DNA of 64,000 nucleotides, from positions 248,001 to 312,000 of the IMG/VR virus record IMGVR_UViG_3300023257_000007. One strand, written 5' to 3'. A program made the translations under genes and the position numbers. The notes below the pieces were generated by a model that did no database searches, had not been told where the DNA came from, and saw only the letters and a program-made list of their open reading frames with translations. Positions 9,521-58,408 of this stretch are shown here, one piece after another; the first letter of the stretch is position 1; every line of letters starts with the position of its first letter.

Positions 9521-10348
9521 ATGATAACACGAATTGCACCATCACCAACAGGATATTTTCATTTAGGAACTCTAAGAACTGCACTACTAAATTATTTAAT
9601 GGCAAGAGCAAACAATGGAACATTCATCCTTAGAATTGATGATACCGACCAAGAAAGAAATCAAAACACATTCACAAACTATATCTATAAACAAATGAAT
9701 AAATTTGGCCTTGATTATGATATAACTTTTAAACAATCAGAAAGATTAGACAGATATAAAGAAGTAGCATATAAAATAGGAACAAAAACTGAAAATGGTT
9801 ATGAATTAAATATGGGAGAATATTCAATGGTTATACTCAGAAATAACGGTTTTCCTACCTATAATTTCTGTTCAATTCTTGATGATTATGATTATGATGT
9901 TACAGATATAGTCAGAGGTGTTGACCATATCGCAAACGAATCTAAACAAAAAATTATATGGGATTTGATTTGTTATGTAGAAAGTGATAAACCTTTTCCT
10001 AATATAATTCATGCTGGTTTACTTTTTGAAGGAAATAAAAAGCTTTCTAAAAGAAGTGGTAATGGTCTAACAGAAGATTATTTAGATTTTAGTACTAATG
10101 CAATATTAAATTGGTTATTAAAATTTGGTTGGTCACATCCAGACCCAAACTTCGATAAGAAGTATCCTACATTAAATATGAATCAAATGATTAATTTATT
10201 CAATGATGGTAAAATCTCCGATAGAAATTGTAAAATAGATAAGGCTAAATTAAACTTTTTAAATAAAAAATGGAGATACTTAGAAAGAAAAGCTAATGAA
10301 AACTCTAAACTTTCTAAGTTTAATGAATTTAATAATGGTCTATTGTAA
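9521..10348 (+). CDS. Minimal glutamyl-tRNA synthetase-like (class I aaRS catalytic domain) protein
   Basis: RIAPSPTGYFHLG (HIGH), LRIDDTD, RGVDH, KLSKR (KMSKS); lacks most of the acceptor-binding insertion and the anticodon domain. Confidence 0.85.
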   Translation: MITRIAPSPTGYFHLGTLRTALLNYLMARANNGTFILRIDDTDQERNQNTFTNYIYKQMNKFGLDYDITFKQSERLDRYKEVAYKIGTKTENGYELNMGEYSMVILRNNGFPTYNFCSILDDYDYDVTDIVRGVDHIANESKQKIIWDLICYVESDKPFPNIIHAGLLFEGNKKLSKRSGNGLTEDYLDFSTNAILNWLLKFGWSHPDPNFDKKYPTLNMNQMINLFNDGKISDRNCKIDKAKLNFLNKKWRYLERKANENSKLSKFNEFNNGLL

Positions 10349-11160: not shown

Positions 11161-12327
11161 ATGTTAAAATCATATAAATATAGATTATATCCAAATCAAG
11201 ATCAAAAAGAATTAATGTCAAAAATTTTTGGTCAAGTAAGATTTGTATATAACCTTGGTTTAGAAACAAAAACATTAGCATATGTTGGAAATAAAACCAA
11301 TTATACTTGTTTTGATTTAAATAAACAAATAACTGAACTTAAAAAAACAGATGCCCCTTGGCTTAAAGAAAGTCCATCACAGGCATTACAAATGTCTATG
11401 AGAAACCTGGATAATGCTTATACAAATTTTTTTAAAGGTGCCGGGTTTCCTAAATTCAAGTCAAAATATACAAAACAATCATTCCAATTACCACAAGGTG
11501 TATTTTTAAGTGAAAATAATAAACAAATTTATATACCTAAACTAAAACTGGTTGATATTGATTTACACAGAGAATTTAAAGGTGACATAAAGACAATAAC
11601 AGTAAGCAAAACAACAACAAACAAATATTATATCAGCATTTTAGTTGATAATAAAAAAGAATTACCTGAAAAGAAACCAATTAAATTAGAAACAACAGTT
11701 GGAATTGATTTGGGTATTAAAGATTTTGCTATCACTTCAGATGGAAAGAAATTCAAGAACCACGATTTCTTTAAATCTTCAATGAAAAAGTTAAGGGTGG
11801 AACAGCGATCCCTTAGTAGAAAACAAAAAGGATCAAACCATTACAACAAACAAAAATTAAAGGTTGCCTTGTTACACGAACACACTAGAAACCAACGAAA
11901 AGATTATTTACATAAAATAAGTAAATATTTGGTAGATAATTATGACACAATTTGTATCGAAAATCTTGGTGTAAGTAATATGGTTAAAAACCATAACCTT
12001 GCTCGTGCTATAAGTGATATGGGTTGGGGTGAATTTAAATCAATGGTTGATTATAAATGTGAATGGTATGGTAAAAATTTAAGTATAATTGGTAGATTTG
12101 ATCCATCAAGCAAAACATGCTCTAATTGTGGTTCAATCAATAAAGAATTGACTTTGAAAGATAGGGAATGGATTTGCTCTAAATGTGGAATAGAACATGA
12201 CAGGGATATAAATGCTGCAATAAATATAAGAAATTTTGGGTTGAGGAACCAACCCAGCGTCACCCAAAGTGAATGGTTACATTGTGCTTGTGGCGTAGAA
12301 ACACATCAGTCTTTAGCTGATGTGTAG
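11161..12327 (+). CDS. tnpB: TnpB RNA-guided endonuclease (IS605 OrfB type)
   Basis: N-terminal YKYRLYP HTH; RuvC GIDLG / IENL / DRDINAA; CxxC...CxxC zinc ribbon. Confidence 0.95.
   Translation: MLKSYKYRLYPNQDQKELMSKIFGQVRFVYNLGLETKTLAYVGNKTNYTCFDLNKQITELKKTDAPWLKESPSQALQMSMRNLDNAYTNFFKGAGFPKFKSKYTKQSFQLPQGVFLSENNKQIYIPKLKLVDIDLHREFKGDIKTITVSKTTTNKYYISILVDNKKELPEKKPIKLETTVGIDLGIKDFAITSDGKKFKNHDFFKSSMKKLRVEQRSLSRKQKGSNHYNKQKLKVALLHEHTRNQRKDYLHKISKYLVDNYDTICIENLGVSNMVKNHNLARAISDMGWGEFKSMVDYKCEWYGKNLSIIGRFDPSSKTCSNCGSINKELTLKDREWICSKCGIEHDRDINAAINIRNFGLRNQPSVTQSEWLHCACGVETHQSLADV
12301..12325 (+). other. IS right-end hairpin (3' part of predicted omegaRNA, overlapping the tnpB 3' end)
   Basis: acacatcag-tctttag-ctgatgtgt, perfect 9-bp stem. 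Confidence 0.8.
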
Positions 12328-13656: not shown

Positions 13657-14547
13657 ATGAACTTAGAAAAAGCATTAAAACTCTATGATAAACTGAAAAA
13701 AATTAGTGATAATTTTATCCTAGCCGGATCAGCTCGCAGAAAGAAACAAGGCGACCTTCATGATTTAGATATAATCTATCATGGAAAAAATATATCTATT
13801 ATAGAAGGAGAATCTATTATAGTCAATGGTGATGATATGAAAAGAATTAAGTTAGATGGTGAACAAATTGATATACATACATGTTCTACTGAAAAATTAG
13901 GTTCTATGTTACTTTATTTCACTGGTTCTAAAACTTATGGTATAAAACTCAGATATAAAGCTAAGAAAATGGGCTATAAACTTAATAGATGGGGTTTATT
14001 TGAAGGTGAAATTTGTTTAGCATCTAAAACAGAGAAAGATATTCTTGATATATTAGGTGAAGAATGGATTACACCAGAAGAAAGAAACTTAGGTGATAAC
14101 ATACTTCTAGACGAAAACAAAAGCGTTGTTAAAGCATTTAGATATTTAGCTCTTTACTGTACTATGAAAAATGATTATTTCAGATCAAGAGCATATAGTG
14201 CAGCGGCAGACATTTTGGGTGGTTTAGAAAATATTAGAGAATTAGTATCAACAGATGAATTAATGGAAATTGAAGGCATTGGTAAATCTATTAATAAAAA
14301 AGTAGAAGAATTCTTAGATACAGGTTCTATTGTGAAACTTAAAGAATATATGGAAGAAATACCAGAAGAGATTTTATCTTTGACTGAACTTGATGGTGTT
14401 GGTCCTAAAAAAGCATATACTATTTGGAAAGAATTAGGTATAATGTCAAGAGAAAAATTAAAAGAGGCTTGTGAAAAAAGAATGATTTCTCAAATCAAAG
14501 GTTTCGGAGTAAAAACAGAAGATAGTATATTAAATCAATTAAAATGA
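13657..14547 (+). CDS. polX: DNA polymerase X family protein with permuted domain order
   Basis: AGSARRK..GDLHDLD, QIDI, LLYFTGSK and ITPEER (palm/thumb) come before FRSRAYSAAA..EIEGIGK and DGVGPKKA..KGFGVKT (HhH/8-kDa and fingers). Confidence 0.85.
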   Translation: MNLEKALKLYDKLKKISDNFILAGSARRKKQGDLHDLDIIYHGKNISIIEGESIIVNGDDMKRIKLDGEQIDIHTCSTEKLGSMLLYFTGSKTYGIKLRYKAKKMGYKLNRWGLFEGEICLASKTEKDILDILGEEWITPEERNLGDNILLDENKSVVKAFRYLALYCTMKNDYFRSRAYSAAADILGGLENIRELVSTDELMEIEGIGKSINKKVEEFLDTGSIVKLKEYMEEIPEEILSLTELDGVGPKKAYTIWKELGIMSREKLKEACEKRMISQIKGFGVKTEDSILNQLK

Positions 14548-15393: not shown

Positions 15394-15403
15394 TTAATAT
15401 ATA
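15394..15403 (+). promoter_or_regulatory. TTAATATATA promoter-like motif
   Basis: Exact motif 5 nt upstream of the N-tagged operon starting at 15409. Confidence 0.55.
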
Positions 15404-15408
15404 GGTTC

Positions 15409-15783
15409 ATGAAATATCTAAATAGATATAATGAGTCTAAACCGAATGAAGAAAATCTTTTTAAGTATTTTAAAAATGTTTTGTCTAAATATGAGAATTT
15501 TAAAGAGATTGTGTTTGAAAAATTTCTTGTAACAAATATCAATAATAAATATGATTCTTTTCAATATGCTGCAGAATTTAACACTCTTTATAAACCTGGT
15601 TTAGAAATAGAAATTGAAGATTTATATAAAGTCTCAATATTAGGACTTGAAATTAAAAAAGAATTAAACTTAAAAGAAGTAAGGTTTGAACAACACACAC
15701 ACTCAAGTTATTTTATATTAATTACAAAAGATATATCAGAATATAAAGAAATGATTGAAGGAAATAAAATGGGTTTAATATAA
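15409..15783 (+). CDS. N-tagged, C-tag A hypothetical protein
   Basis: MKYLNRYNES...EGNKMGLI. Confidence 0.85.
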   Translation: MKYLNRYNESKPNEENLFKYFKNVLSKYENFKEIVFEKFLVTNINNKYDSFQYAAEFNTLYKPGLEIEIEDLYKVSILGLEIKKELNLKEVRFEQHTHSSYFILITKDISEYKEMIEGNKMGLI

Positions 15784-16230
15784 ATGAAATATTTAAAAAC
15801 ATATAATCGAATGATAAATGAGATTTCAGTTAACGAAAATCAATTAATTAAACAACATTTAAGTAGTGATGGTAAATCATTAAATATAGGTAATTTAAAT
15901 TTAACTGAATTACCTGAATTACCTGAAGGTTTAGAAAGATTATATTGTACTAATAACCAATTAACTAAATTACCTAAATTACCAAAAGGATTAGAAAGAT
16001 TATATTGTGATAATAACCAATTAACTGAATTACCTGAATTACCTAAAGGATTAAAATATTTATATTGTGGTAATAACAAATTAACTAAATTACCTGAAAT
16101 ACCTAAAGGATTAAGAGAATTATATTGTCATGATAACCAATTACCTTATGATAATTTAGAAAAATATTGGGAATGGTTTTGGAAAGAAAATCCAGACCTT
16201 CACAATGCAAAAAAAATGGGATTATATTAA
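15784..16230 (+). CDS. Short-LRR protein (4 repeats), N-tag and C-tag A
   Basis: MKYLKTYNRMINEISVN...LRRs...NAKKMGLY. Confidence 0.95.
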   Translation: MKYLKTYNRMINEISVNENQLIKQHLSSDGKSLNIGNLNLTELPELPEGLERLYCTNNQLTKLPKLPKGLERLYCDNNQLTELPELPKGLKYLYCGNNKLTKLPEIPKGLRELYCHDNQLPYDNLEKYWEWFWKENPDLHNAKKMGLY

Positions 16231-16835
16231 TGAAGTATTTAAAGACATATGAATCTAAATTATGGGATAAAATTAGTAAAATGAAAAATAAAATCATAAG
16301 AAAGATAATTACTAAGATGAAAAACCTTAGGATAGATACGTATGTTCCTGAAAATATAAAAATTAATGGTAATTATATTTATTATATATATCAACATAAT
16401 TACAATATTGAAATAATGTCATATGATAAAAATGGTAATGAAATATATCTATCATCAAATAGTGATGATATTGGTATAGAAAGTTTATATGAAATATGGC
16501 AAGAAATGAAATATATAACATTAAAAAGTATTATTGAATATTCAATTGAAAGGGATGAATCTTGGATTAATGAAATAGTTGATAAAAATAAAGATAGAAT
16601 AAATTTTGGTAATTTTTATGATGGTGATGATATTATAGACACACATTTAAATCATAAGTATGTCTTAGATGATATATTAAACACATATGAATCTCAAAAA
16701 TATTTATTTACTGAAAGAGAAGATATGATTGTTTGGTTTTTAGATGAATGTGAATCAAATCACATAAAAATGCACGTTGATATAAAAGAAGAATTTAAAA
16801 ATATAATAGAAGCAAGAAAAATGGGATTAGTATAA
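16230..16835 (+). CDS. N-tagged, C-tag A hypothetical protein
   Basis: True start at the TAATG overlap: MKYLKTYES...EARKMGLV. Confidence 0.85.
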   Translation: MKYLKTYESKLWDKISKMKNKIIRKIITKMKNLRIDTYVPENIKINGNYIYYIYQHNYNIEIMSYDKNGNEIYLSSNSDDIGIESLYEIWQEMKYITLKSIIEYSIERDESWINEIVDKNKDRINFGNFYDGDDIIDTHLNHKYVLDDILNTYESQKYLFTEREDMIVWFLDECESNHIKMHVDIKEEFKNIIEARKMGLV

Positions 16836-16836
16836 A

Positions 16837-17680
16837 ATGAAATATTTAAAAACATATTCAGAAAATAAATTAATTAAAGACCATTTAAGTGATGACGGTA
16901 AAAAATTAAATTTTGATTATTTAGATTTAACTGAAATATGCTGATATTTCTGATTACTACGACAATATAATTCTTCTAAATCTTTAGGCAATTCAGGTAA
17001 TTCAGTTAATTGGTTATCATAACAATACAACGTTTCTAACCCTTTAGGTAATTTAGGTAATTCGGTTAATTTGTTATTATCACATTTTAATGTTTTTAAT
17101 CCTTCAGGTAATTCAGGTAATTCGGTTAATTTGTTATTATCACATTTTAATGTTTTTAATCCTTCAGGTAATTCAGGTAATTCGGTTAATTTGTTATCAT
17201 AAACAAATTAACTAAATTACCCGAAATACCTAAAGGGTTAGAATATTTATATTGTCGTGGCAACGGTAAATCATTAAGTTTAGGCCAGTTAAATCTAACT
17301 AAATTACCTGAATTACCTGAAGGATTAGAAAGATTATATTGTTAATGAAAACCAATTAATTAAAGACCATTTAAGTGACAGTATTTTAAAAAAATGTTTA
17401 ACCCAACAAATATAGAAAATGAACTTAAATAACAACGAAGATTTTATCTTATTATGGCATAATAATGGAACTGAAATCTCATTTATCATTCGATTATATG
17501 TCTTTAAATATTTCATTAATATAGTCCCATTTTATTTGCATTATGAAGGTCTGGGTTTTCTTTCCAAAACCATTTCCAATAACCTTCTAAATTATTATAA
17601 GGTAATTGGTTACCACCAACTGCCTGAATTACCTGAAGGATTAGAAAGATTATATTGTAATAATTACTATTATAATGATA
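16837..17680. pseudogene. Scrambled LRR locus: fragments in both orientations
   Basis: + N-tag/N-cap 16837-~16937; inverted LRR modules ~16938-17201; + modules and N-cap pieces ~17202-17380; inverted C-cap/tag/N-tag junction ~17466-17612; + module ~17616-17665. Confidence 0.8.
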
Positions 17681-17681
17681 T

Positions 17682-18161
17682 ATGAGTCTTAATAGTAAAT
17701 ATCCTGAACAATTTAGATATTTTGAAAAAATGATTAATGAAAGCAAACAAATACTCGAATTAATAAAGAAAAGATTATATGAATTAGATCCTGATATGGT
17801 ATTGGCAAATCAACTAGGATTATTTGAAGGGTTAATTACAACATTTTCTAAAGATGATAGAATAGTTTTTGAAGATATTAAAAGAAAAGATGTTATAAGA
17901 GCTGGTGAATTACTACTTAAAGAACTAAATATACAAACAAGGTGGGATGACGGATTTTTAGGGTTCTGTCACAATATTGTAGAATGTGGACCAGATGAAT
18001 TCTATTATATAATGAAAAGTGAATGGGATTCAGCTAGTCTTTATGTTAAAGAAATGCCTTACAAATCACAAGTAAAAGCAACACATTATAACTTCTATGA
18101 CTGGCTTAAAGAAAATGATTTAGAATACTATTTCGACGCAGATCAAATGGGTTTAATTTAA
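17682..18161 (+). CDS. Hypothetical protein with an internal and a terminal C-tag A
   Basis: Internal LANQLGLF; ends DADQMGLI. Confidence 0.75.
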   Translation: MSLNSKYPEQFRYFEKMINESKQILELIKKRLYELDPDMVLANQLGLFEGLITTFSKDDRIVFEDIKRKDVIRAGELLLKELNIQTRWDDGFLGFCHNIVECGPDEFYYIMKSEWDSASLYVKEMPYKSQVKATHYNFYDWLKENDLEYYFDADQMGLI

Positions 18162-18349
18162 GGAAGTTTAATCGAATCAAAATCTATAATTTTCCAAGAA
18201 TAAGGATTTTCACCAATTTTATGATGTTCTTTATACATTATAGTCCTATAAACAACACAACCCTTTCTTGTACATTGTTGTTTATAATTACCATTGTCCC
18301 ATATATGTCCAAACCACTTACACTTTTTTCTTATAAACCATTTCTTCAT
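18158..18349 (-). CDS. Small Cys/His-containing hypothetical protein
   Basis: KCKWFGHIW...QCTRKGC. Confidence 0.6.
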   Translation of the reverse strand: MKKWFIRKKCKWFGHIWDNGNYKQQCTRKGCVVYRTIMYKEHHKIGENPYSWKIIDFDSIKLP

Positions 18350-18382
18350 TAAATTTATATTTATTTTTTGATAAATAGTTTA

Positions 18383-19624
18383 TTAAAAACTAACCCATCT
18401 CGAAAGCGTTAATCTCTCTTTAAATGCCCATTTATTAATTATATTTAACTCATATTTAGAAGGTAATCTATTATTCTTGCCACGAATCTGAGTCACTACT
18501 CTATCACTATTAACCTCAATAGTTAAGAGTTTACTGTCTAATTTTGTTTTGCTATTTACATTCAAAGACCAAATAGAAGTTCTACCACCAGAACATGAAT
18601 TAATATAAGAACTTACACAATGTTTCATATATCTACCCTCATCTAAAATATCACCACTCGTAGTTAATTGATTAATCAAATAAGTCATTTTATTTTCATC
18701 TTTACCAACTAACCAAACATAATTATTAATTGGTAATGGTTGCCATAATTTAGGAACACCTTTTCTAGATACTCTATTAGTTTGGTTATGCCATTTATCA
18801 ACCAATTGTAATAAAGCATCTGGGTTTCTATCTTTCATGTTGAAATTAGGTTTATCAGGTGCTAAAGTAACAAATACATTATTTTGAAAAACTCTTCTTG
18901 TTTCATATTTAATATGATTTATATAATCAACAATAGGGTTATATTTTTCAGGATCTAACATAGGATTATTAATAAAAAATCTTAGAACACTATTCCAAAA
19001 CTCATTATTGCCAAAATCAGAAGCAATTTTAGTAGACATAACACCTTTAACAGATCTCATGTCACCACCCATATCAACAATTTGTCCATATCTTATAGCT
19101 TCCATAGGAAGAAAATCATCTGGTGATTGCATAAAAGCATGAGCCATCTTCTTAGTTAATGGAATCGGTGTTTTAGATTTTCTAATATTTTTACCAACTC
19201 CAATATCAATAAACCATCTAATAGGATTACCTTCAAATTTAATACCACCATTCCAAAACCATGCATTATACATGAATTTAGGCATATCATACTTAACAAA
19301 TAAATGGTCAGCAAGTTCTCTAAATTGTCTATCTCTTGATCTTGATTTCTTTTTCCAAGAACTAATATCACGAATCCAATCTTTTTTGTATTCACAAAAT
19401 TTATGAAGTGATATAACATAATTATAATCACAAAGCAATTCAGCTTTTTGATTAGCAACACAATTTAATAAATTTCTAAAATCTTTATTTTTACCATCTT
19501 TTATTTCACTGTAAATATACTGGTAAGGACAATTATTACCTGTGTAATATTGTGTCTTAGCCAATTCATCAATTAATTTAGACGATGGTCTCTTTAAAAG
19601 TTTATGTAATTTATTATTTCCCAT
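18383..19624 (-). CDS. PcfJ-like domain protein
   Basis: C-terminal EGRYMKHCVSSY...SIWSL...LLTIEV...QIRGKNNRLP signature. Confidence 0.8.
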   Translation of the reverse strand: MGNNKLHKLLKRPSSKLIDELAKTQYYTGNNCPYQYIYSEIKDGKNKDFRNLLNCVANQKAELLCDYNYVISLHKFCEYKKDWIRDISSWKKKSRSRDRQFRELADHLFVKYDMPKFMYNAWFWNGGIKFEGNPIRWFIDIGVGKNIRKSKTPIPLTKKMAHAFMQSPDDFLPMEAIRYGQIVDMGGDMRSVKGVMSTKIASDFGNNEFWNSVLRFFINNPMLDPEKYNPIVDYINHIKYETRRVFQNNVFVTLAPDKPNFNMKDRNPDALLQLVDKWHNQTNRVSRKGVPKLWQPLPINNYVWLVGKDENKMTYLINQLTTSGDILDEGRYMKHCVSSYINSCSGGRTSIWSLNVNSKTKLDSKLLTIEVNSDRVVTQIRGKNNRLPSKYELNIINKWAFKERLTLSRWVSF

Positions 19625-19953
19625 TATAATAATCCTAATTTATAAGCTGTGTTATACTTTTCAATGTTATCATATATTTCAAATAGTTCATCTGCATTAC
19701 TACACATAATTGGATTATATTCACGATCATAATTTATTGTAACATGAGCAATATTGTTTTTTTCAATACCTCCAGTAATATTAACAAGAGCTATAAATAA
19801 ATTATAATTTTCATCATATTCAAAATCATTATAAAGACCACTTAGATCAAATCTTTCTTTAAGTTTAAAAAAATTTTCTTCCCAACATTTCTTATCCGTT
19901 GTATCTATTACTATTAATTCAATCATAACATAAAAATACAATTTTTTTCTCAC
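19624..19953 (-). CDS. Small hypothetical protein, C-tag A
   Basis: Ends TAYKLGLL. Confidence 0.8.
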   Translation of the reverse strand: MRKKLYFYVMIELIVIDTTDKKCWEENFFKLKERFDLSGLYNDFEYDENYNLFIALVNITGGIEKNNIAHVTINYDREYNPIMCSNADELFEIYDNIEKYNTAYKLGLL

Positions 19954-20440: not shown

Positions 20441-20919
20441 TGAAATATTTAAAGACATATAGTGAAAATCAATTAATTAAACAATATTTAAGTAATGATG
20501 GTAAAACATTGGATTTAGGTAATTTCAAATTAACAGAATTGCCTGAATTACCTGAAGGATTAAAAGTATTATATTGTTATAATAATCAATTACCTGAATT
20601 ACCTGAATTACCTAAAGGATTAGAATATTTATATTGTTATACTAATAAATTAACTGAGTTACCTGAATTACCTAAAGGGTTAGAAGGATTATATTGTGGT
20701 AATAACCAATTAACTAAATTACCTGAATTACCTAAAGGATTAAAAAGATTATATTGTTATTATAACCAATTAACTAAATTACCTGAATTACCTAAAAGAT
20801 TAAAAGAATTATATTGTTATTATAACCAATTACCTTATGATAATTTAGAAGGTTATTGGAAATGGTTTTGGAAAGAAAACCCAGACCTACATAATGCAAA
20901 TAAAATGGGACTGTATTAA
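20440..20919 (+). CDS. Short-LRR protein (5 repeats), N-tag and C-tag A
   Basis: Repeats and caps as for 3377-3856. Confidence 0.95.
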   Translation: MKYLKTYSENQLIKQYLSNDGKTLDLGNFKLTELPELPEGLKVLYCYNNQLPELPELPKGLEYLYCYTNKLTELPELPKGLEGLYCGNNQLTKLPELPKGLKRLYCYYNQLTKLPELPKRLKELYCYYNQLPYDNLEGYWKWFWKENPDLHNANKMGLY

Positions 20920-21479
20920 TGAAATATTTAAAGACATATAATCGAATGATAAATGAGATTTCAGTTAATGAAAATCTGATTAACCGTTTAAGTGATGATG
21001 GTAAAAATTTAAATCTAAATAGTTTAAATTTAACCAAATTGCCTGAATTACCTAAAGGGTTAGAAAAATTAATGTGTTATAATAATCAATTAACTGAATT
21101 ACCTGAATTACCAAAAGGATTAGAAATGTTATATTGTGACAACAACAAATTAATTGAATTACCTGAACTACCAAAAGGGTTAGAAATATTAGATTGTGAT
21201 TATAACAAACTAACTGAATTACCTGAATTACCTAAAGGGTTAGAAAGATTATATTGTGGTAATAATAAATTAACAGAATTACCTGAAATACCTAAAGGGT
21301 TAGAAAGATTATATTGTGGTAATAACCAATTAACTGAATTACCTGAATTATCTAAAAGATTAGAATATTTAAATTGTTATAATAACCAATTACCTTATAA
21401 TAATTTAGAAGAATATTGGGAATGGTTTTGGAAAGAAAACCCAGACCTACATAATGCAAATAAAATGGGATTGTATTAA
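20919..21479 (+). CDS. Short-LRR protein (6 repeats), N-tag and C-tag A
   Basis: Repeats and caps; two blocks identical to gene 3377-3856. Confidence 0.95.
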   Translation: MKYLKTYNRMINEISVNENLINRLSDDGKNLNLNSLNLTKLPELPKGLEKLMCYNNQLTELPELPKGLEMLYCDNNKLIELPELPKGLEILDCDYNKLTELPELPKGLERLYCGNNKLTELPEIPKGLERLYCGNNQLTELPELSKRLEYLNCYNNQLPYNNLEEYWEWFWKENPDLHNANKMGLY

Positions 21480-21510: not shown

Positions 21511-22000
21511 ATGATGTATTTAAAGACATATGAAAATTTTAATGATATTGAAAATTATTTCAAATTGCATAATAAAATCAAAAAATCTAAGAAAAGACTT
21601 AAAAAATATAAGAAAGAAAAGAAACTATCCAAAAAAAATGGTTTATAAATTAATAATCAAAAAAGCTAGAGAAATACTTGATAAATACGGTACACCTTAT
21701 TTATATGATAGGGAATATGAAAATACCGTGAAAATACCTATAACACCAGTTAAAATTGAAGGTGCAAAATATGATAGAATATTAATTTGGTTTGAAACTA
21801 AAAAAGAAATTATTGGATCAAATTCATTTGATTTTGATGATGAAAATATTGGTTTTGATAATGGTTATGAATATTATGAAGAATGGTGTTCATTAGATTC
21901 ATTTAGAAATTCAATTAAAGCATTAACAATAATGTATGAAAATTTATTTGATGAAGATTTACCAATTAAATTAGAAGCAAATAAATTTGGATTGTTATAA
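21511..22000 (+). pseudogene. N-tagged, C-tag A gene with a probable frameshift
   Basis: MMYLKTYENFNDIENYFKLHNKIK from 21511; body and EANKFGLL in the 21530 frame. Confidence 0.7.
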
Positions 22001-22402
22001 TATACCAAGGTTTTTACCCTCTTCGTAAGCTCTTACAATTTTAGAATATTTAGGATCATTTTTTAGATTTTTATTAAAACCAACCCTACTATCAATTAAT
22101 TCATCAAAACCATTATCAATTAATATCTTTTGAATATTAAAATCAGTCATTGTAGCATCACTCATTATTTTAGGATCTGAACCTTTCTTAATTAAATATT
22201 CAAAAACCTCATCATCATAATAAGCAAGATCTAAAACATTATTATAAGTACTTTCATAACTTACATCAGCACCTTTATTAATAAACATTTTAATTAATTC
22301 AAAATCTTCTGTTTTTAAAGCCAATAAAAACAAATCATTTAAATCTTCTTGATCAATGTTATTGCTCTCTAAAAATAATTTATATGTTTGTAGTTTTACC
22401 AT
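21995..22402 (-). CDS. Ankyrin-repeat-like protein, N-tag-like start and C-tag A
   Basis: ALKTEDFELIKMFINKGADVS and EYLIKKGSDP ankyrin-like units; MVKLQTYKLFLES...EGKNLGIL. Confidence 0.7.
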   Translation of the reverse strand: MVKLQTYKLFLESNNIDQEDLNDLFLLALKTEDFELIKMFINKGADVSYESTYNNVLDLAYYDDEVFEYLIKKGSDPKIMSDATMTDFNIQKILIDNGFDELIDSRVGFNKNLKNDPKYSKIVRAYEEGKNLGIL

Positions 22403-28686: not shown

Positions 28687-28986
28687 ATGAAACATTTAAA
28701 GACATATAATGAAAATCAATTTATTAAAGACCATTTAAGTGGTGATGGTAAATCATTAGATTTAGATAAGTTAAATCTAACTGAATTACCTAAATTACCT
28801 GAAGGATTAGAAAGATTAGATTGTGATAATAACCTATTAACAGAATTACCTGAATTACCAAAAGGCTTAGAAAGATTATATTGTTATGATAACAAATTAC
28901 CTTATAATGATTTAAAAGGATATTGGAAATGGTTCTGGGAACAAAATCCAGACCTTTATAATGCAAATAAAATGGGATTATATTAA
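28687..28986 (+). CDS. Short-LRR protein (2 repeats), N-tag and C-tag A
   Basis: Minimal member with both caps. Confidence 0.95.
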   Translation: MKHLKTYNENQFIKDHLSGDGKSLDLDKLNLTELPKLPEGLERLDCDNNLLTELPELPKGLERLYCYDNKLPYNDLKGYWKWFWEQNPDLYNANKMGLY

Positions 28987-49956: not shown

Positions 49957-50364
49957 TTAAATGTAATAAATTTGTTCTAAACTAAAAAATTCACCTTTTG
50001 GAGCTATAATAGGTGGTGGTTTACTCCCTTTAGGTAATTCAGGCAATTCAGTTAATTTGTTATTACCACAATATAATATTTTTAACCCTTTAGGTAATTC
50101 AGGTAATTCAGTTAATTGGTTATAATCACAATCTAATATTAATAATCCTTTTGGTAATTCAGGTAATTGTGTTAATTGGTTATTAGAACAATATAATGTT
50201 TCTAATCCTTTAGGTAATTCAGGTAATTCAGGTAATTCAGTTAATTTGTTATTACCACAATACAAATATTTTAATCCTTCAGGTAATTCAGGTAATTCAG
50301 TTAATTTGAAATTACCTAAATCCAATGTTTTACCATCATTACTTAAATGGTTTTTTATATTCAT
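49957..50364 (-). CDS. Short-LRR protein (4 repeats) lacking both the N-tag and the C-cap/C-tag
   Basis: Starts MNIKNHLSNDGK; ends GSKPPPIIAPKGEFFSLEQIYYI. Confidence 0.85.
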   Translation of the reverse strand: MNIKNHLSNDGKTLDLGNFKLTELPELPEGLKYLYCGNNKLTELPELPELPKGLETLYCSNNQLTQLPELPKGLLILDCDYNQLTELPELPKGLKILYCGNNKLTELPELPKGSKPPPIIAPKGEFFSLEQIYYI

Positions 50365-57211: not shown

Positions 57212-58408
57212 TTAATTTGAACCAATAGTTATTAATTCTGGATGAACAGCACACCCTCTATCCCATTTAAATTCTGGGACTACTTTTTTTAATATATTAT
57301 ATGATGCGTTTAAATCAGCATTTATTAATATGTTTTCTTTACTTTTAAACATACCCCTTGAAACCCTTTTACCACAATATTCTTTATGTTTTTTTAATTC
57401 TTCACCATCAATAAAAGAACATTTACTTGTGAAACTTTCTTCATTTAATTTAACATTCAAACCTTCTTTTAATGCTTTATATTCAATCATTTGAATTAAT
57501 TTATAAAAAGGTATTTGAACAAAATTTTGATTATTCTTCTTACCCATATTTACATTTTGTTTCCAACTTTTATTATAACCAATAATTATTGTATTTAAAT
57601 CATTTTTTAAACAAAAATCAACCAAATATTTAGATGCATTATGTAAGTAATTATTTATTTTATTATTTCTTTTTTCAGTTAATAAATATAACCTTTTACT
57701 TATAAAAGTTTTCTTTGGTAATTTTGATTGTAATTTAGACAACTTTTTATTATAATATTGATTAATTGATTTTAATGGTCTACCGTTAATGATTATAGGT
57801 TTTACAACCTTTTCATTTGAAGTTATAGCCATTAAATTATTTACACCTAAATCAACACTACAATATTTACTATTGTCTAACTTTAAAGGTTTTTCATCAT
57901 ATTTATATACTATATTTATTTTATATTTTTTTGTTTTAAGTGGTTTTACCTGAACCTCAATTATTTTTTTACTTTTATTTTGAAATGGTAATTTAATACC
58001 TGTTTTATATAATTCTATATAACCTTCCTTTTCAAGATTTTTAGTTTTTACAGCATTATCCACCAAAATGGCTGTAAATTTACTATTTTTAGGTAAATAT
58101 TTAGGTAAATTTGGTTTACCAGTAAATCTATTTGGATTCTTTTTCCATTCTTTCATAGCGTTAAAAAAACTTTTCCAATTTGCATTAAGTATTCTTAGTG
58201 TTGGTCTAGCAATTCTAGATAATAAATCTTTATATTCTACGTGATCTTTCATAATGGTATACATATCATATACTGTAATATAATTACCATGATTAATAAA
58301 TTCCTGTCTGATAATGTAGTTAGCTTTATTGTAAAGATTTTTGGTTTTAACACAAATATCGTTTAAATTATTGTTATTTTTAATTATATGTGATTCAATT
58401 AAATACAA
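57212..58408 (-). CDS. tnpB: TnpB-family nuclease (IS1341-like clade), TTG start; no tnpA nearby
   Basis: KNLYNKANY, SVDLGVNN, IIIGYNKSWKQ, NEESFTSKCS, INADLNASYNI. Confidence 0.9.
   Translation of the reverse strand: MYLIESHIIKNNNNLNDICVKTKNLYNKANYIIRQEFINHGNYITVYDMYTIMKDHVEYKDLLSRIARPTLRILNANWKSFFNAMKEWKKNPNRFTGKPNLPKYLPKNSKFTAILVDNAVKTKNLEKEGYIELYKTGIKLPFQNKSKKIIEVQVKPLKTKKYKINIVYKYDEKPLKLDNSKYCSVDLGVNNLMAITSNEKVVKPIIINGRPLKSINQYYNKKLSKLQSKLPKKTFISKRLYLLTEKRNNKINNYLHNASKYLVDFCLKNDLNTIIIGYNKSWKQNVNMGKKNNQNFVQIPFYKLIQMIEYKALKEGLNVKLNEESFTSKCSFIDGEELKKHKEYCGKRVSRGMFKSKENILINADLNASYNILKKVVPEFKWDRGCAVHPELITIGSN

What the first reader, a model, noticed from the sequence alone, without database searches (positions are those of the whole stretch)
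16837..17680. Scrambled LRR locus with at least seven fragments in both orientations
Seen, in order: an N-tag/N-cap start; four inverted LRR modules (with a 60-bp tandem repeat near 17060-17190); a fold-back junction aatttgtt-atcata-aacaaatt near 17190-17210; forward module, N-cap and pre-N-cap pieces in permuted order; about 85 nt of unrelated sequence; an inverted C-cap/tag/N-tag junction; and another forward module. The inverted junction (about 17466-17612) is near-identical to 20822-20965 but differs at about 3 positions, so it is not a plain copy of that locus. Inference: either a snapshot of template-switching/recombination among LRR modules (a reservoir of donor cassettes or a failed assembly product), or an amplification/assembly chimera.
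Basis: partly seen in the sequence, partly recalled or inferred. Interest (0 to 1): 0.65.

Follow-up and report, generated by a model that had tools for sequence, protein, structure and literature searches.

The report
Scrambled LRR gene remnant in huge phage
In a very large bacteriophage genome, a small leucine-rich-repeat gene has been wrecked by a real 684-base patchwork insertion stitched from short copies of the phage's own genes; it is a recombination scar, not an assembly error and not a working system.

Summary
The window is part of a huge phage of at least 434 kb, from salt-lake metagenomes. Positions 16837-17714 consist of at least 10 short segments in both orientations.

- **Structure.** A truncated LRR paralog (N-tag, N-cap, one module) is split inside its first module by a 684-bp insertion (16936-17619).
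- **Content of the insertion.** It holds four inverted LRR modules, an in-register fold-back, permuted N-cap pieces and an inverted C-cap/stop/N-tag junction. Two further pieces come from an unrelated gene array about 24 kb upstream.
- **Not an artefact.** A second IMG assembly is identical over 8.6 kb. Independent contigs from three other runs reproduce six of the nine internal junctions exactly, at the depth of the flanks.
- **Polymorphic.** A near-identical strain in a marine run lacks the 684 bp.
- **No programmed system found.** No reverse transcriptase was found, the sampled populations are not heterogeneous at this locus, and no cassette array was found.

My reading is a pseudogene scar from serial copy-and-join events, probably template switching, in a hyperplastic region full of tagged paralogs. 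Interest is modest. The tag system around the locus is more intriguing.

The parts
16837..16935 (+). Segment A: N-tag (MKYLKTY...) plus N-cap of the resident, truncated LRR paralog, up to the start of its first module
   Evidence: 78-99 nt, 84-94% to the starts of the other LRR genes. In run X5 a contig joins this segment directly to segment I.
16936..17619 (.). The 684-bp composite insertion as a whole (segments B to H plus 7 orphan bases)
   Evidence: an X5 contig matches 16574-16933 exactly and then continues at 17618 (skips 684, 2 ambiguous bases). Contigs from X1, X2 and X4 carry the insertion.
16936..16956 (+). Segment B: 21 nt copied from codons ~10-16 of an MSLNNN-family gene (genome 242427-242447)
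   Evidence: 21/21 identical, E = 8e-5, with sharp loss of identity on both sides.
16957..17201 (-). Segment C: four 60-bp LRR modules in inverted orientation. Two neighbouring modules are nearly identical, so there was a recent tandem duplication.
   Evidence: The best paralog in this genome is 89% identical. A related phage contig holds an exact 40-mer of this segment inside an intact LRR gene.
17188..17209 (.). Fold-back junction: an 8-nt stem with a 6-nt spacer at the centre of two modules lying head to head in register. It sits on the quasi-palindromic codons C-Y-D-N-K.
   Evidence: 46/70 in register; other offsets give 13-29; hairpin -20.8 kcal/mol, z = -5.3. Contigs from X1 and X2 span it exactly.
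17202..17262 (+). Segment D: one forward LRR module
   Evidence: 50 nt, 90-92% to modules of other LRR genes.
17263..17343 (+). Segment E: N-cap plus first module of another LRR paralog. 17307-17342 is 36/36 identical to 17623-17658.
   Evidence: (90% to 15871-15948 and 28747-28824).
17344..17378 (+). Segment F: pre-N-cap piece (ENQLIKDHLSD), placed after the N-cap instead of before it
   Evidence: 32/32 identical to genome 12318-12287.
17379..17469 (+). Segment G: 91-nt copy of a gene boundary of the MSLN/MNLN gene array (the end of one gene plus the first 16 codons of the next)
   Evidence: 88/91 identical to genome 241204-241294, with sharp ends.
17469..17612 (-). Segment H: inverted C-cap, C-tag, stop and N-tag junction of two LRR-type genes
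   Evidence: 141/144 to 20966-20823, and 90-94% to six other such junctions.
17613..17619 (.). Seven bases with no assignable source. The last two may belong to segment A.
17620..17658 (+). Segment I: the rest of the resident gene's first and only module
17658..17714 (+). Segment J: 57-nt patch of intergenic sequence plus the first 11 codons (MSLNSKYPEQF), identical to genome 240342-240398. It ends the LRR remnant without a C-cap and provides the start of the next gene.
   Evidence: 57/57, unrelated on both sides.
17419..17685 (+). Chimeric 88-aa ORF created by the rearrangement. It has a borrowed gene start (G), an antisense reading of H, then module I. Its stop overlaps the next gene's ATG.
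   Evidence: There is no evidence that it is expressed.

Best explanation
This is a real but non-functional rearrangement scar in the hyperplastic, paralog-rich end of a huge tailed phage.

**What is there.** One member of a family of small stand-alone LRR genes (20-residue YopM/IpaH-type repeats with a conserved N-tag and C-tag) had already been cut down to N-tag, N-cap and one module. A 684-bp composite insertion then split it inside that module.

**What the insertion is made of.** It is built from copies of at least 7 short pieces (21-245 nt). Some come from other LRR paralogs. Others come from gene boundaries of an unrelated small-gene array about 24 kb upstream. The pieces lie in both orientations, and for the four segments whose source was located (B, G, H and J) that source remains in place.

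**Most likely mechanism (inferred).** A broken or stalled 3' end made several successive template switches during recombination-dependent replication or repair. It was guided by the many short homeologous repeats in this region: the 60-bp modules, the tag-coding gene ends, and a quasi-palindrome in the module that permits a strand flip.

**Outcome.** The result is a pseudogene, with a 35-aa stub and an accidental 88-aa chimeric ORF. It is fixed in the salt-lake population and absent from a near-identical marine strain.
For: **Real sequence**
- The second assembly, IMGVR_UViG_3300022868_000015, is 100% identical over 8603 nt including the locus.
- Logan contigs of runs X1, X2 and X4 match exactly over 16836-17019, 17168-17331, 17307-17376 and 17347-17429. 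They bridge the junctions A|B, B|C, C|D, D|E, E|F and F|G.
- Their depths (5-6, 10-14 and 11-31) are about the same as the unique flanks, which lie at 5, 9-13 and 12-16.

**Derived insertion**
- An X5 contig matches 360 nt of the unique left flank exactly and then joins 16933 to 17618.
- By my reading of the window sequence, the joined form is in frame and matches the canonical N-cap-to-module arrangement of the intact paralogs.
- The two ends of the insert share no homology, so homologous deletion cannot give that form.

**Copied pieces with sharp ends and sources still in place**
- B is 21/21, F 32/32, G 88/91, H 141/144 and J 57/57 identical to its source.

**Strand flip**
- The fold-back lies in exact module register on a quasi-palindrome and forms a strong hairpin.

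**Context**
- There are 10 intact LRR paralogs with 2-9 modules, and a RecA/UvsX-type recombinase is present.
- This 0.9-kb locus is involved in 10 of the genome's 29 short high-identity patches.

**Precedents**
- T4 replication depends on recombination, and MMBIR gives templated insertions and inversions (PMC3678771).
- The hyperplastic regions of T4-type phages shuffle at short conserved gene-boundary motifs (PMC2839356, PMC4122927).
Against: - Where both partners of a junction are known, the overlap is only 0-2 nt. This fits blunt end-joining as well as template switching, so microhomology is not shown.
- No exact donor was found for segments C, D and E (at most 92%). G and H differ by 2-3% from the copies in this genome, although the flanks are about 100% identical between strains. 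The true donors are therefore unsampled, either in the rest of the genome or in a co-infecting relative.
- The listed Logan contigs did not bridge junctions G|H (17469) and H|I (17612-17620). Only the two IMG assemblies support those.
- The X5 contig reaches only 35 nt past the joint.
- The supporting runs are probably one lake system, so the populations are not fully independent.
- One event or several cannot be told apart.
Confidence: 0.6

Rival explanations
1. The outcome is the same, but the mechanism differs. A double-strand break in the LRR remnant was repaired by end-joining, which captured several loose fragments of replicating phage DNA as filler, with no template switching.
For: The junctions are sharp, with 0-2 nt of overlap and 7 orphan bases at one end. 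The fragments are short and lie in random orientation. A family-X DNA polymerase gene lies 2.3 kb upstream.
Against: No Ku was found in the 348 kb. The fold-back lies in exact module register on a quasi-palindrome, and F follows E as if by a slipped copy. Both facts suggest guided rather than random joining. Capture of seven or more fragments in one repair would be unusual.
Confidence: 0.2
2. The locus is a silent store of donor cassettes. It would be used by gene conversion or copy choice to re-assort modules and tags in the expressed LRR genes, as a phage analogue of lamprey VLR assembly or of bacterial silent-cassette antigenic variation.
For: Partial, promoterless LRR pieces lie in both orientations next to expressed paralogs. 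Module number varies from 2 to 9 among paralogs. Run X5 holds an exact 89-nt match to segment C at three times the flank depth while lacking the insertion.
Against: - There is only one such locus, with about six modules, in 434 kb.
- A third of the fragments are not LRR sequence.
- The nearly identical marine strain lacks the locus, so it is dispensable.
- Junction contigs are at flank depth and no variant forms were seen.
- No tract identical to segments C, D or E was found in any expressed paralog of this genome.
- No reverse transcriptase was found.
Confidence: 0.05
3. The structure is an artefact: an assembly misjoin through repeated modules, or chimeras from whole-genome amplification.
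For: The locus is full of 60-bp repeats and palindromes, which confuse assemblers. Two junctions have no listed bridging Logan contig.
Against: - The sequence is identical in a second assembly.
- Exact bridging contigs from three other runs, built by another assembler, lie at flank depth.
- The fragments differ from every other copy in the genome, so they are not misjoined reads of those copies.
Confidence: 0.04
4. The locus is the decayed remains of two or more complete LRR genes that once lay head to head here. They were eroded by many deletions, and the short X5 form is a later deletion.
For: LRR genes occur on both strands and as adjacent pairs. Segment H is a junction between two genes.
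Against: - This does not explain pieces B, G and J, which come from an unrelated gene array.
- It does not explain the permuted order E then F.
- A later deletion would have to restore a canonical in-frame module without any flanking homology.
Confidence: 0.08

Closest known systems
Complex rearrangements by serial template switching (FoSTeS/MMBIR, 'chromoanasynthesis')
   Same: Several short templated segments are copied from related or nearby loci, in direct and inverted orientation. The sources stay intact and a fold-back lies at a palindrome. Replication in such phages is recombination-driven (PMC3678771).
   Different: These were described in eukaryotic and bacterial chromosomes, not phages. 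Microhomology at the junctions, a hallmark, is only 0-2 nt here. The scale is tens of bases rather than kilobases.
Hyperplastic regions of T4-type phages and PeSL-mediated modular shuffling
   Same: Blocks of small non-essential ORFan genes are exchanged by recombination at short conserved sequences at gene boundaries (PMC2839356, PMC4122927). Here three or four of the fragments (G, H, J and perhaps the E/F joint) are gene boundaries.
   Different: PeSLs are non-coding promoter/terminator cassettes. Here the recurrent boundary sequences encode conserved protein termini. The product is a scrambled pseudogene, not a clean gene swap.
Lamprey VLR assembly from flanking LRR cassettes (copy choice)
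   Same: There is an incomplete LRR gene whose N-terminal and later parts are separated by intervening sequence, with LRR cassettes in both orientations nearby.
   Different: There is no large cassette array and no population heterogeneity. The interrupted form is the derived, dead state rather than a germline precursor. Non-LRR DNA is included. This resemblance rests on my own knowledge of VLR and fails the tests made here.
YopM / IpaH / SspH / SlrP LPX-type LRR domains
   Same: The intact paralogs have the same 20-residue repeat (LxxLPxLPxxLxxLxxxxNx). YopM is the best PDB match, at E = 8e-98.
   Different: The phage proteins are 99-239 aa, with no NEL ligase domain among the paralogs scanned. 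They have their own N-cap, C-cap and terminal tags. Nothing links them to type III secretion or to animal hosts.
T4 internal proteins with a capsid targeting sequence
   Same: These are a diverse, fast-evolving set of small proteins that share only a short conserved N-terminal tag (PMC3012670). The phage here has about 35 genes beginning MKYLKTY.
   Different: The function of the tags here is untested. The far commoner C-terminal K[ML]GL[LIY] tag has no T4 counterpart.

Membership tests
Assembly or amplification chimera | Junctions seen in one assembly only, or not supported at the depth of the flanks | tested here: not met
   The second IMG assembly is identical. Logan contigs of X1, X2 and X4 bridge six junctions exactly at flank depth. 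Junctions at 17469 and 17612-17620 have no listed bridging Logan contig.
Assembly or amplification chimera | Joined pieces are identical to their true loci elsewhere in the genome | tested here: not met
   C, D and E are at most 92%, G is 96.7% and H is 97.9% identical to the best other copy.
Template-switch complex rearrangement (FoSTeS/MMBIR type) | Several short templated segments, direct and inverted, with source loci left intact | tested here: met
   There are at least 7 inserted segments of 21-245 nt. The sources of B, G, H and J are intact elsewhere.
Template-switch complex rearrangement (FoSTeS/MMBIR type) | Microhomology of a few bases at breakpoints | tested here: inconclusive
   The overlap is 0-2 nt at A|B, F|G, G|H and H|I. 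It may be 6-7 nt at B|C, and there is a 15-nt quasi-palindrome at C|D. The donors of C, D and E are not known exactly.
Diversity-generating retroelement | Reverse transcriptase with a template/variable repeat pair differing at adenines | tested here: not met
   There is no RVT_1 match in G000, G001 or G003, about 434 kb in all. The repeats differ at all bases. The genome is incomplete.
VLR-like or silent-cassette diversification system | Large array of partial cassettes flanking an incomplete expression gene | tested here: not met
   There is one locus with about six modules. All other LRR copies are complete genes.
VLR-like or silent-cassette diversification system | Many alternative assembled forms within a population | tested here: not met
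   Each run shows a single form at flank depth. The only variant is presence or absence of the insertion between populations. Contigs drop rare variants, so a minority form is not excluded.
Transposable element or MITE | Terminal inverted repeats, a target-site duplication, and other copies in the genome | tested here: not met
   The two ends are unrelated, at most 2 ambiguous bases lie at the site, and no other copy of any internal junction exists.
LPX-type LRR proteins (YopM/IpaH class), for the intact paralogs | 20-residue repeat LxxLPxLPxxLxxLxxxxNx | tested here: met
   The period is 60 nt. Matches are LRR_4 at 1e-19 to 2e-25 and YopM at 8e-98, SspH2 at 5e-56.
IpaH/SspH E3 ligase effectors | C-terminal NEL ubiquitin-ligase domain | tested here: not met
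   Pfam finds only LRR families in the three paralogs scanned (148-186 aa). All ten are 99-239 aa and nine of them end in a short C-cap and tag.
IpaH/SspH E3 ligase effectors | Delivery by type III secretion into animal cells | not testable with these tools
   The genes lie in a phage from salt-lake metagenomes. Nothing suggests such delivery.

The most novel reading that the evidence does not exclude
The conserved tag-coding gene ends and this scrambled locus are parts of a cassette-exchange system. Under this reading the phage uses the recurring N-tag and C-tag boundary sequences, together with silent partial cassettes such as this locus, to re-assort LRR modules and whole small genes by copy choice. 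That would continually generate new host-targeting proteins, as a viral counterpart of VLR or silent-cassette variation.
Probability: 0.05. Interest if true: 0.85.

Novelty: new member of a known kind. Interest (0 to 1): 0.35.

Why it matters
The locus has no function of its own. Its value is as a clean, population-verified example of a multi-fragment templated insertion in a phage genome, with both the filled and the empty site seen in nature. It shows how violently the paralog-rich ends of huge phages are reshuffled, and that gene boundaries are favoured breakpoints. It also marks the true point of interest nearby. More than 100 small genes, including YopM-type LRR and ankyrin-like binders, share short conserved termini. 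Their role (packaging, turnover or recombination) is unknown and testable.

Tried and rejected
- **Artefact.** Rejected on the evidence.
- **DGR.** No reverse transcriptase in G000, G001 or G003.
- **End-joining machinery.** No Ku was found. This is no proof of absence, because the genome is incomplete.
- **Known RNA.** Rfam gave only sub-threshold miRNA-hairpin look-alikes at the fold-back, which are trivial.
- **Promoters and terminators.** The scan found no more than the shuffled controls.
- **Synteny in relatives.**
  - The flank protein found only the same genotype in IMG/VR and in the metagenome contigs.
  - A DNA search with 15400-19700 in the related 166-kb phage G002 found no match to either flanking gene.
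  - The Mahaphage-like references are too distant, with only 46% identity in the tail sheath.
- **Exact donors for segment C.** A 40-nt pattern found only the same genotype and one related phage gene that is 89% identical overall.
- **Empty-site allele in IMG/VR.**
  - A 29-nt pattern of the natural X5 joint found nothing.
  - That search was made before the YopM/IpaH-type similarity was known. I did not extend it afterwards.
- **tblastn of an LRR protein against GenBank phages.** No match, probably because of the low-complexity filter, so this is uninformative.
- **Ace Lake origin.** A paper search did not identify this contig. I make no claim beyond the tool's label "salt lake metagenome".
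- **Not run.** I did not use the big protein searches, structure prediction or complex prediction. The LRR identity was clear from the family scans, and no claim here rests on them.

Full report
**1. Where the window lies**

The window is bases 248001-312000 of a 348,222-bp IMG/VR virus contig with 25% G+C. The contig is from a tailed phage.
- It encodes a tail sheath, a large terminase, topoisomerase II and a ribonucleotide reductase.
- The sheath is 46% identical to those of the 635-735-kb "uncultured phage" genomes LR756501-4 and LR745206. It is more distantly related to phages of Flavobacterium, Tenacibaculum, Chryseobacterium and Prevotella.
- From this I infer a huge phage with a Bacteroidota-type host.
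- Two contigs of another metagenome, G003 (344,634 bp) and G001 (88,478 bp), are colinear with it and extend it. The genome is therefore at least about 434 kb.

**2. The gene family**

The genome holds ten intact small LRR genes of 99-239 aa.
- Nine of the ten share one plan: an N-tag (MKYLKTY...), a pre-N-cap and N-cap, then 2-9 modules of exactly 60 bp, then a C-cap ending in the tag KMGLY and a stop.
- The tenth, at 49957-50364, lacks the N-tag and the C-cap/tag.
- The stop often overlaps the next gene's ATG.
- Pfam sees only LRR families.
- The nearest solved structures are YopM, SspH2, SspH1, SlrP and IpaH. These are the 20-residue LPX class, and no NEL domain is present.
- They are stand-alone binding scaffolds of unknown target.

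**3. The observation**

Sharper mapping gives at least ten segments.

| Segment | Coordinates | Strand | Content | Best match |
|---|---|---|---|---|
| A | 16837-16935 | + | N-tag and N-cap | other LRR gene starts, 84-94% |
| B | 16936-16956 | + | 21 nt from a non-LRR gene | genome 242427-242447, 21/21 |
| C | 16957-17201 | - | four modules, inverted | best paralog 89% |
| D | 17202-17262 | + | one module | 90-92% |
| E | 17263-17343 | + | N-cap plus module | 90% |
| F | 17344-17378 | + | pre-N-cap piece, out of order | genome 12318-12287, 32/32 |
| G | 17379-17469 | + | the end of one gene plus the first 16 codons of the next | genome 241204-241294, 88/91 |
| H | 17469-17612 | - | inverted C-cap/stop/N-tag junction | 20966-20823, 141/144 |
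| (orphan) | 17613-17619 | . | seven bases with no source | none |
| I | 17620-17658 | + | one module | 36/36 identical to part of E |
| J | 17658-17714 | + | intergenic DNA plus the first 11 codons of a gene | genome 240342-240398, 57/57 |

- In every case identity drops abruptly outside the segment.
- B, G and J all come from one array of small MSLN/MNLN genes about 24 kb upstream. The mosaic is therefore not confined to LRR sequence, and it runs into the start of the next gene.
- C and D lie head to head in exact module register around 17198|17199. They match at 46 of 70 positions, against 13-29 at other offsets.
- The centre of that pair sits on the codons C-Y-D-N-K, whose DNA is nearly its own reverse complement.
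- The strand folds into a long imperfect hairpin at -20.8 kcal/mol, z = -5.3.

**4. Real or artefact**

Three lines of evidence make it real.
- First, the 88-kb contig from a different metagenome is identical over 8603 nt including the whole locus.
- Second, Logan contigs are built per run by a different assembler. Those of three salt-lake runs match exactly over 16836-17019, 17168-17331, 17307-17376 and 17347-17429.
  - These contigs bridge A|B, B|C, C|D, D|E, E|F and F|G.
  - Their depths equal those of the unique flanks, so the scrambled form is the major allele there and not a rare product.
- Third, the pieces differ from every other copy in the genome. They cannot be reads of those copies joined wrongly.

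There are limits. No listed Logan contig bridges 17469 or 17612-17620. The runs are probably from one lake system.

**5. Direction of change**

In the marine run X5 a contig matches 360 nt of the unique left flank without a difference. It then continues at 17618, skipping 684 bp.
- Read against the window sequence, that joint is in frame. It gives the same N-cap-to-module arrangement as the intact paralogs.
- The two ends of the 684 bp share no homology, so a homologous deletion could not have produced it.
- I therefore take the X5 form as the empty site and 16936-17619 as a derived insertion.
- The X5 contig reaches only 35 nt past the joint, so what follows in that strain is unknown.
- Even the empty-site gene is a remnant. 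It has one module and no C-cap, and it is closed by patch J.
- I give no joined sequence of the broken gene. One search, a 29-nt pattern of the natural joint, was made before the YopM-type similarity was known and was not extended.

**6. Mechanism**

What is shown:
- The insert consists of copies, because the sources of B, G, H and J are intact.
- The pieces are short, in both orientations, and sharply bounded.
- One junction is a register-exact strand flip at a quasi-palindrome.
- Three or four pieces are gene boundaries.

What is inferred: a broken or stalled 3' end switched templates several times during recombination-dependent replication or repair.
- The dense homeologous repeats of this region would have helped it.
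- The phage has a RecA/UvsX-type recombinase.
- T4-type replication is recombination-dependent, and MMBIR produces templated insertions and inversions at palindromes (PMC3678771).

Against this reading:
- The overlaps at junctions with known partners are only 0-2 nt.
- End-joining capture of DNA fragments therefore remains a serious rival. A PolX gene lies at 13657-14547, but no Ku was found.

G and H differ by 2-3% from the copies in this genome while the flanks are nearly identical between strains. The donors were therefore other copies, either in the unsampled part of the genome or in a co-infecting relative.
- A related 166-kb phage carries an intact LRR gene with an exact 40-mer of segment C.
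- X5 holds an exact 89-nt match to C at three times the flank depth although it lacks the insertion.

**7. Programmed systems**
- No reverse transcriptase was found in about 434 kb.
- No cassette array was found.
- No within-population variants were seen.
- No transposon ends or further copies exist.
- No Rfam family matches.
- The donor-reservoir and VLR-like readings are not excluded outright, but nothing supports them.

**8. Consequences for coding**
- The resident gene is reduced to a 35-aa stub.
- The inverted modules are open but lack a start codon.
- An 88-aa ORF (17419-17685) begins with the borrowed gene start in G, runs through the antisense of H and ends at the next gene's ATG.
- Whether that ORF is made is unknown. 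All holder runs are DNA.

**9. Comparison and verdict**

The locus works like a FoSTeS/MMBIR-type complex rearrangement. It lies in what corresponds to a T4-type hyperplastic region (PMC2839356, PMC4122927).
- The difference is that the recurrent boundary sequences here encode protein termini rather than promoter/terminator cassettes.
- It is a new example of a known kind of event and is of modest interest in itself.
- The surrounding tag system deserves its own study.

Noticed in passing
whole contig, densest at genome 210-340 kb (window 360-42000 and beyond): 105 of 597 ORFs of at least 60 aa end in [KQRN][MLF][GNQK][LIV][LIYMFWV]-stop, typically K-M/L-G-L-L/I/Y, against 0.5 expected by chance. 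The tag is written with many synonymous Gly and Leu codons, so it is conserved as protein. The tagged proteins are small (median 117 aa). Eight non-LRR ones were scanned against both Pfam and PHROGs and gave no confident match. The pattern is absent from LR756501 and occurs once in LR745206.
   Followed up: partly
window, e.g. 15409, 15784, 16230, 16837, 20440, 20919, 26985, 33819: About 35 genes start with MKYLKTY (N/S/E)EN..., and 25 of them also carry the C-tag. This recalls the capsid targeting sequence shared by the otherwise diverse T4 internal proteins (PMC3012670). It is a lead only and was not tested.
   Followed up: partly
L034:1109-4645 (IMGVR_UViG_3300025715_000014): An unrelated large phage contig has its own run of small genes that all start MKHLK(I/L)YEQ(Y/F)(D/N)FED.... 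One of them is an LRR protein. Conserved N-terminal tags on diverse small genes may therefore be widespread in large phages.
   Followed up: no
window 17682-18161 and L021:2366-2554: Two otherwise unrelated genes share an identical 57-nt upstream region plus their first 11 codons (MSLNSKYPEQF). A gene start has been swapped between loci.
   Followed up: partly
window 11161-12327 and 57212-58264: Two TnpB / IS605 OrfB-type genes (OrfB_IS605 plus the Cas12f-like TNB domain) lie in the phage. One is 4.5 kb upstream of the scrambled locus.
   Followed up: no
window 13657-14547: A family-X DNA polymerase-like gene has its domains in an unusual order: the thumb lies at residues 85-144 and the HhH domains follow it. 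It may be permuted or partial.
   Followed up: no
window 9521-10348: A 275-aa class I Glu/Gln tRNA-synthetase catalytic domain stands alone. By my reading it resembles glutamyl-Q tRNA(Asp) synthetase. It ends in ...NNGLL.
   Followed up: no
window 49957-50364 (-): A further LRR gene with 5 modules lacks the N-tag and the C-cap/tag. It is another rearranged member of the family.
   Followed up: no
window 21995-22402 (-): A C-tagged 135-aa protein gives a weak ankyrin-repeat match (Ank_2, E = 3e-4, below the cut-off). If this is real, the tags are attached to more than one kind of binding scaffold.
   Followed up: no
L030-L032 (IMGVR_UViG_GVMAG-M-3300013132-26, GVMAG-M-3300018426-17): Contigs binned as giant-virus MAGs encode longer LRR proteins, for example one of 400 aa. 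They have a similar 20-residue repeat and are 53-55% identical to the phage modules, but they lack the tags.
   Followed up: no
window 18383-19624 (-): A 413-aa PcfJ-like protein (E = 2e-12) lies on the opposite strand just downstream of the locus. Its function is unknown.
   Followed up: no
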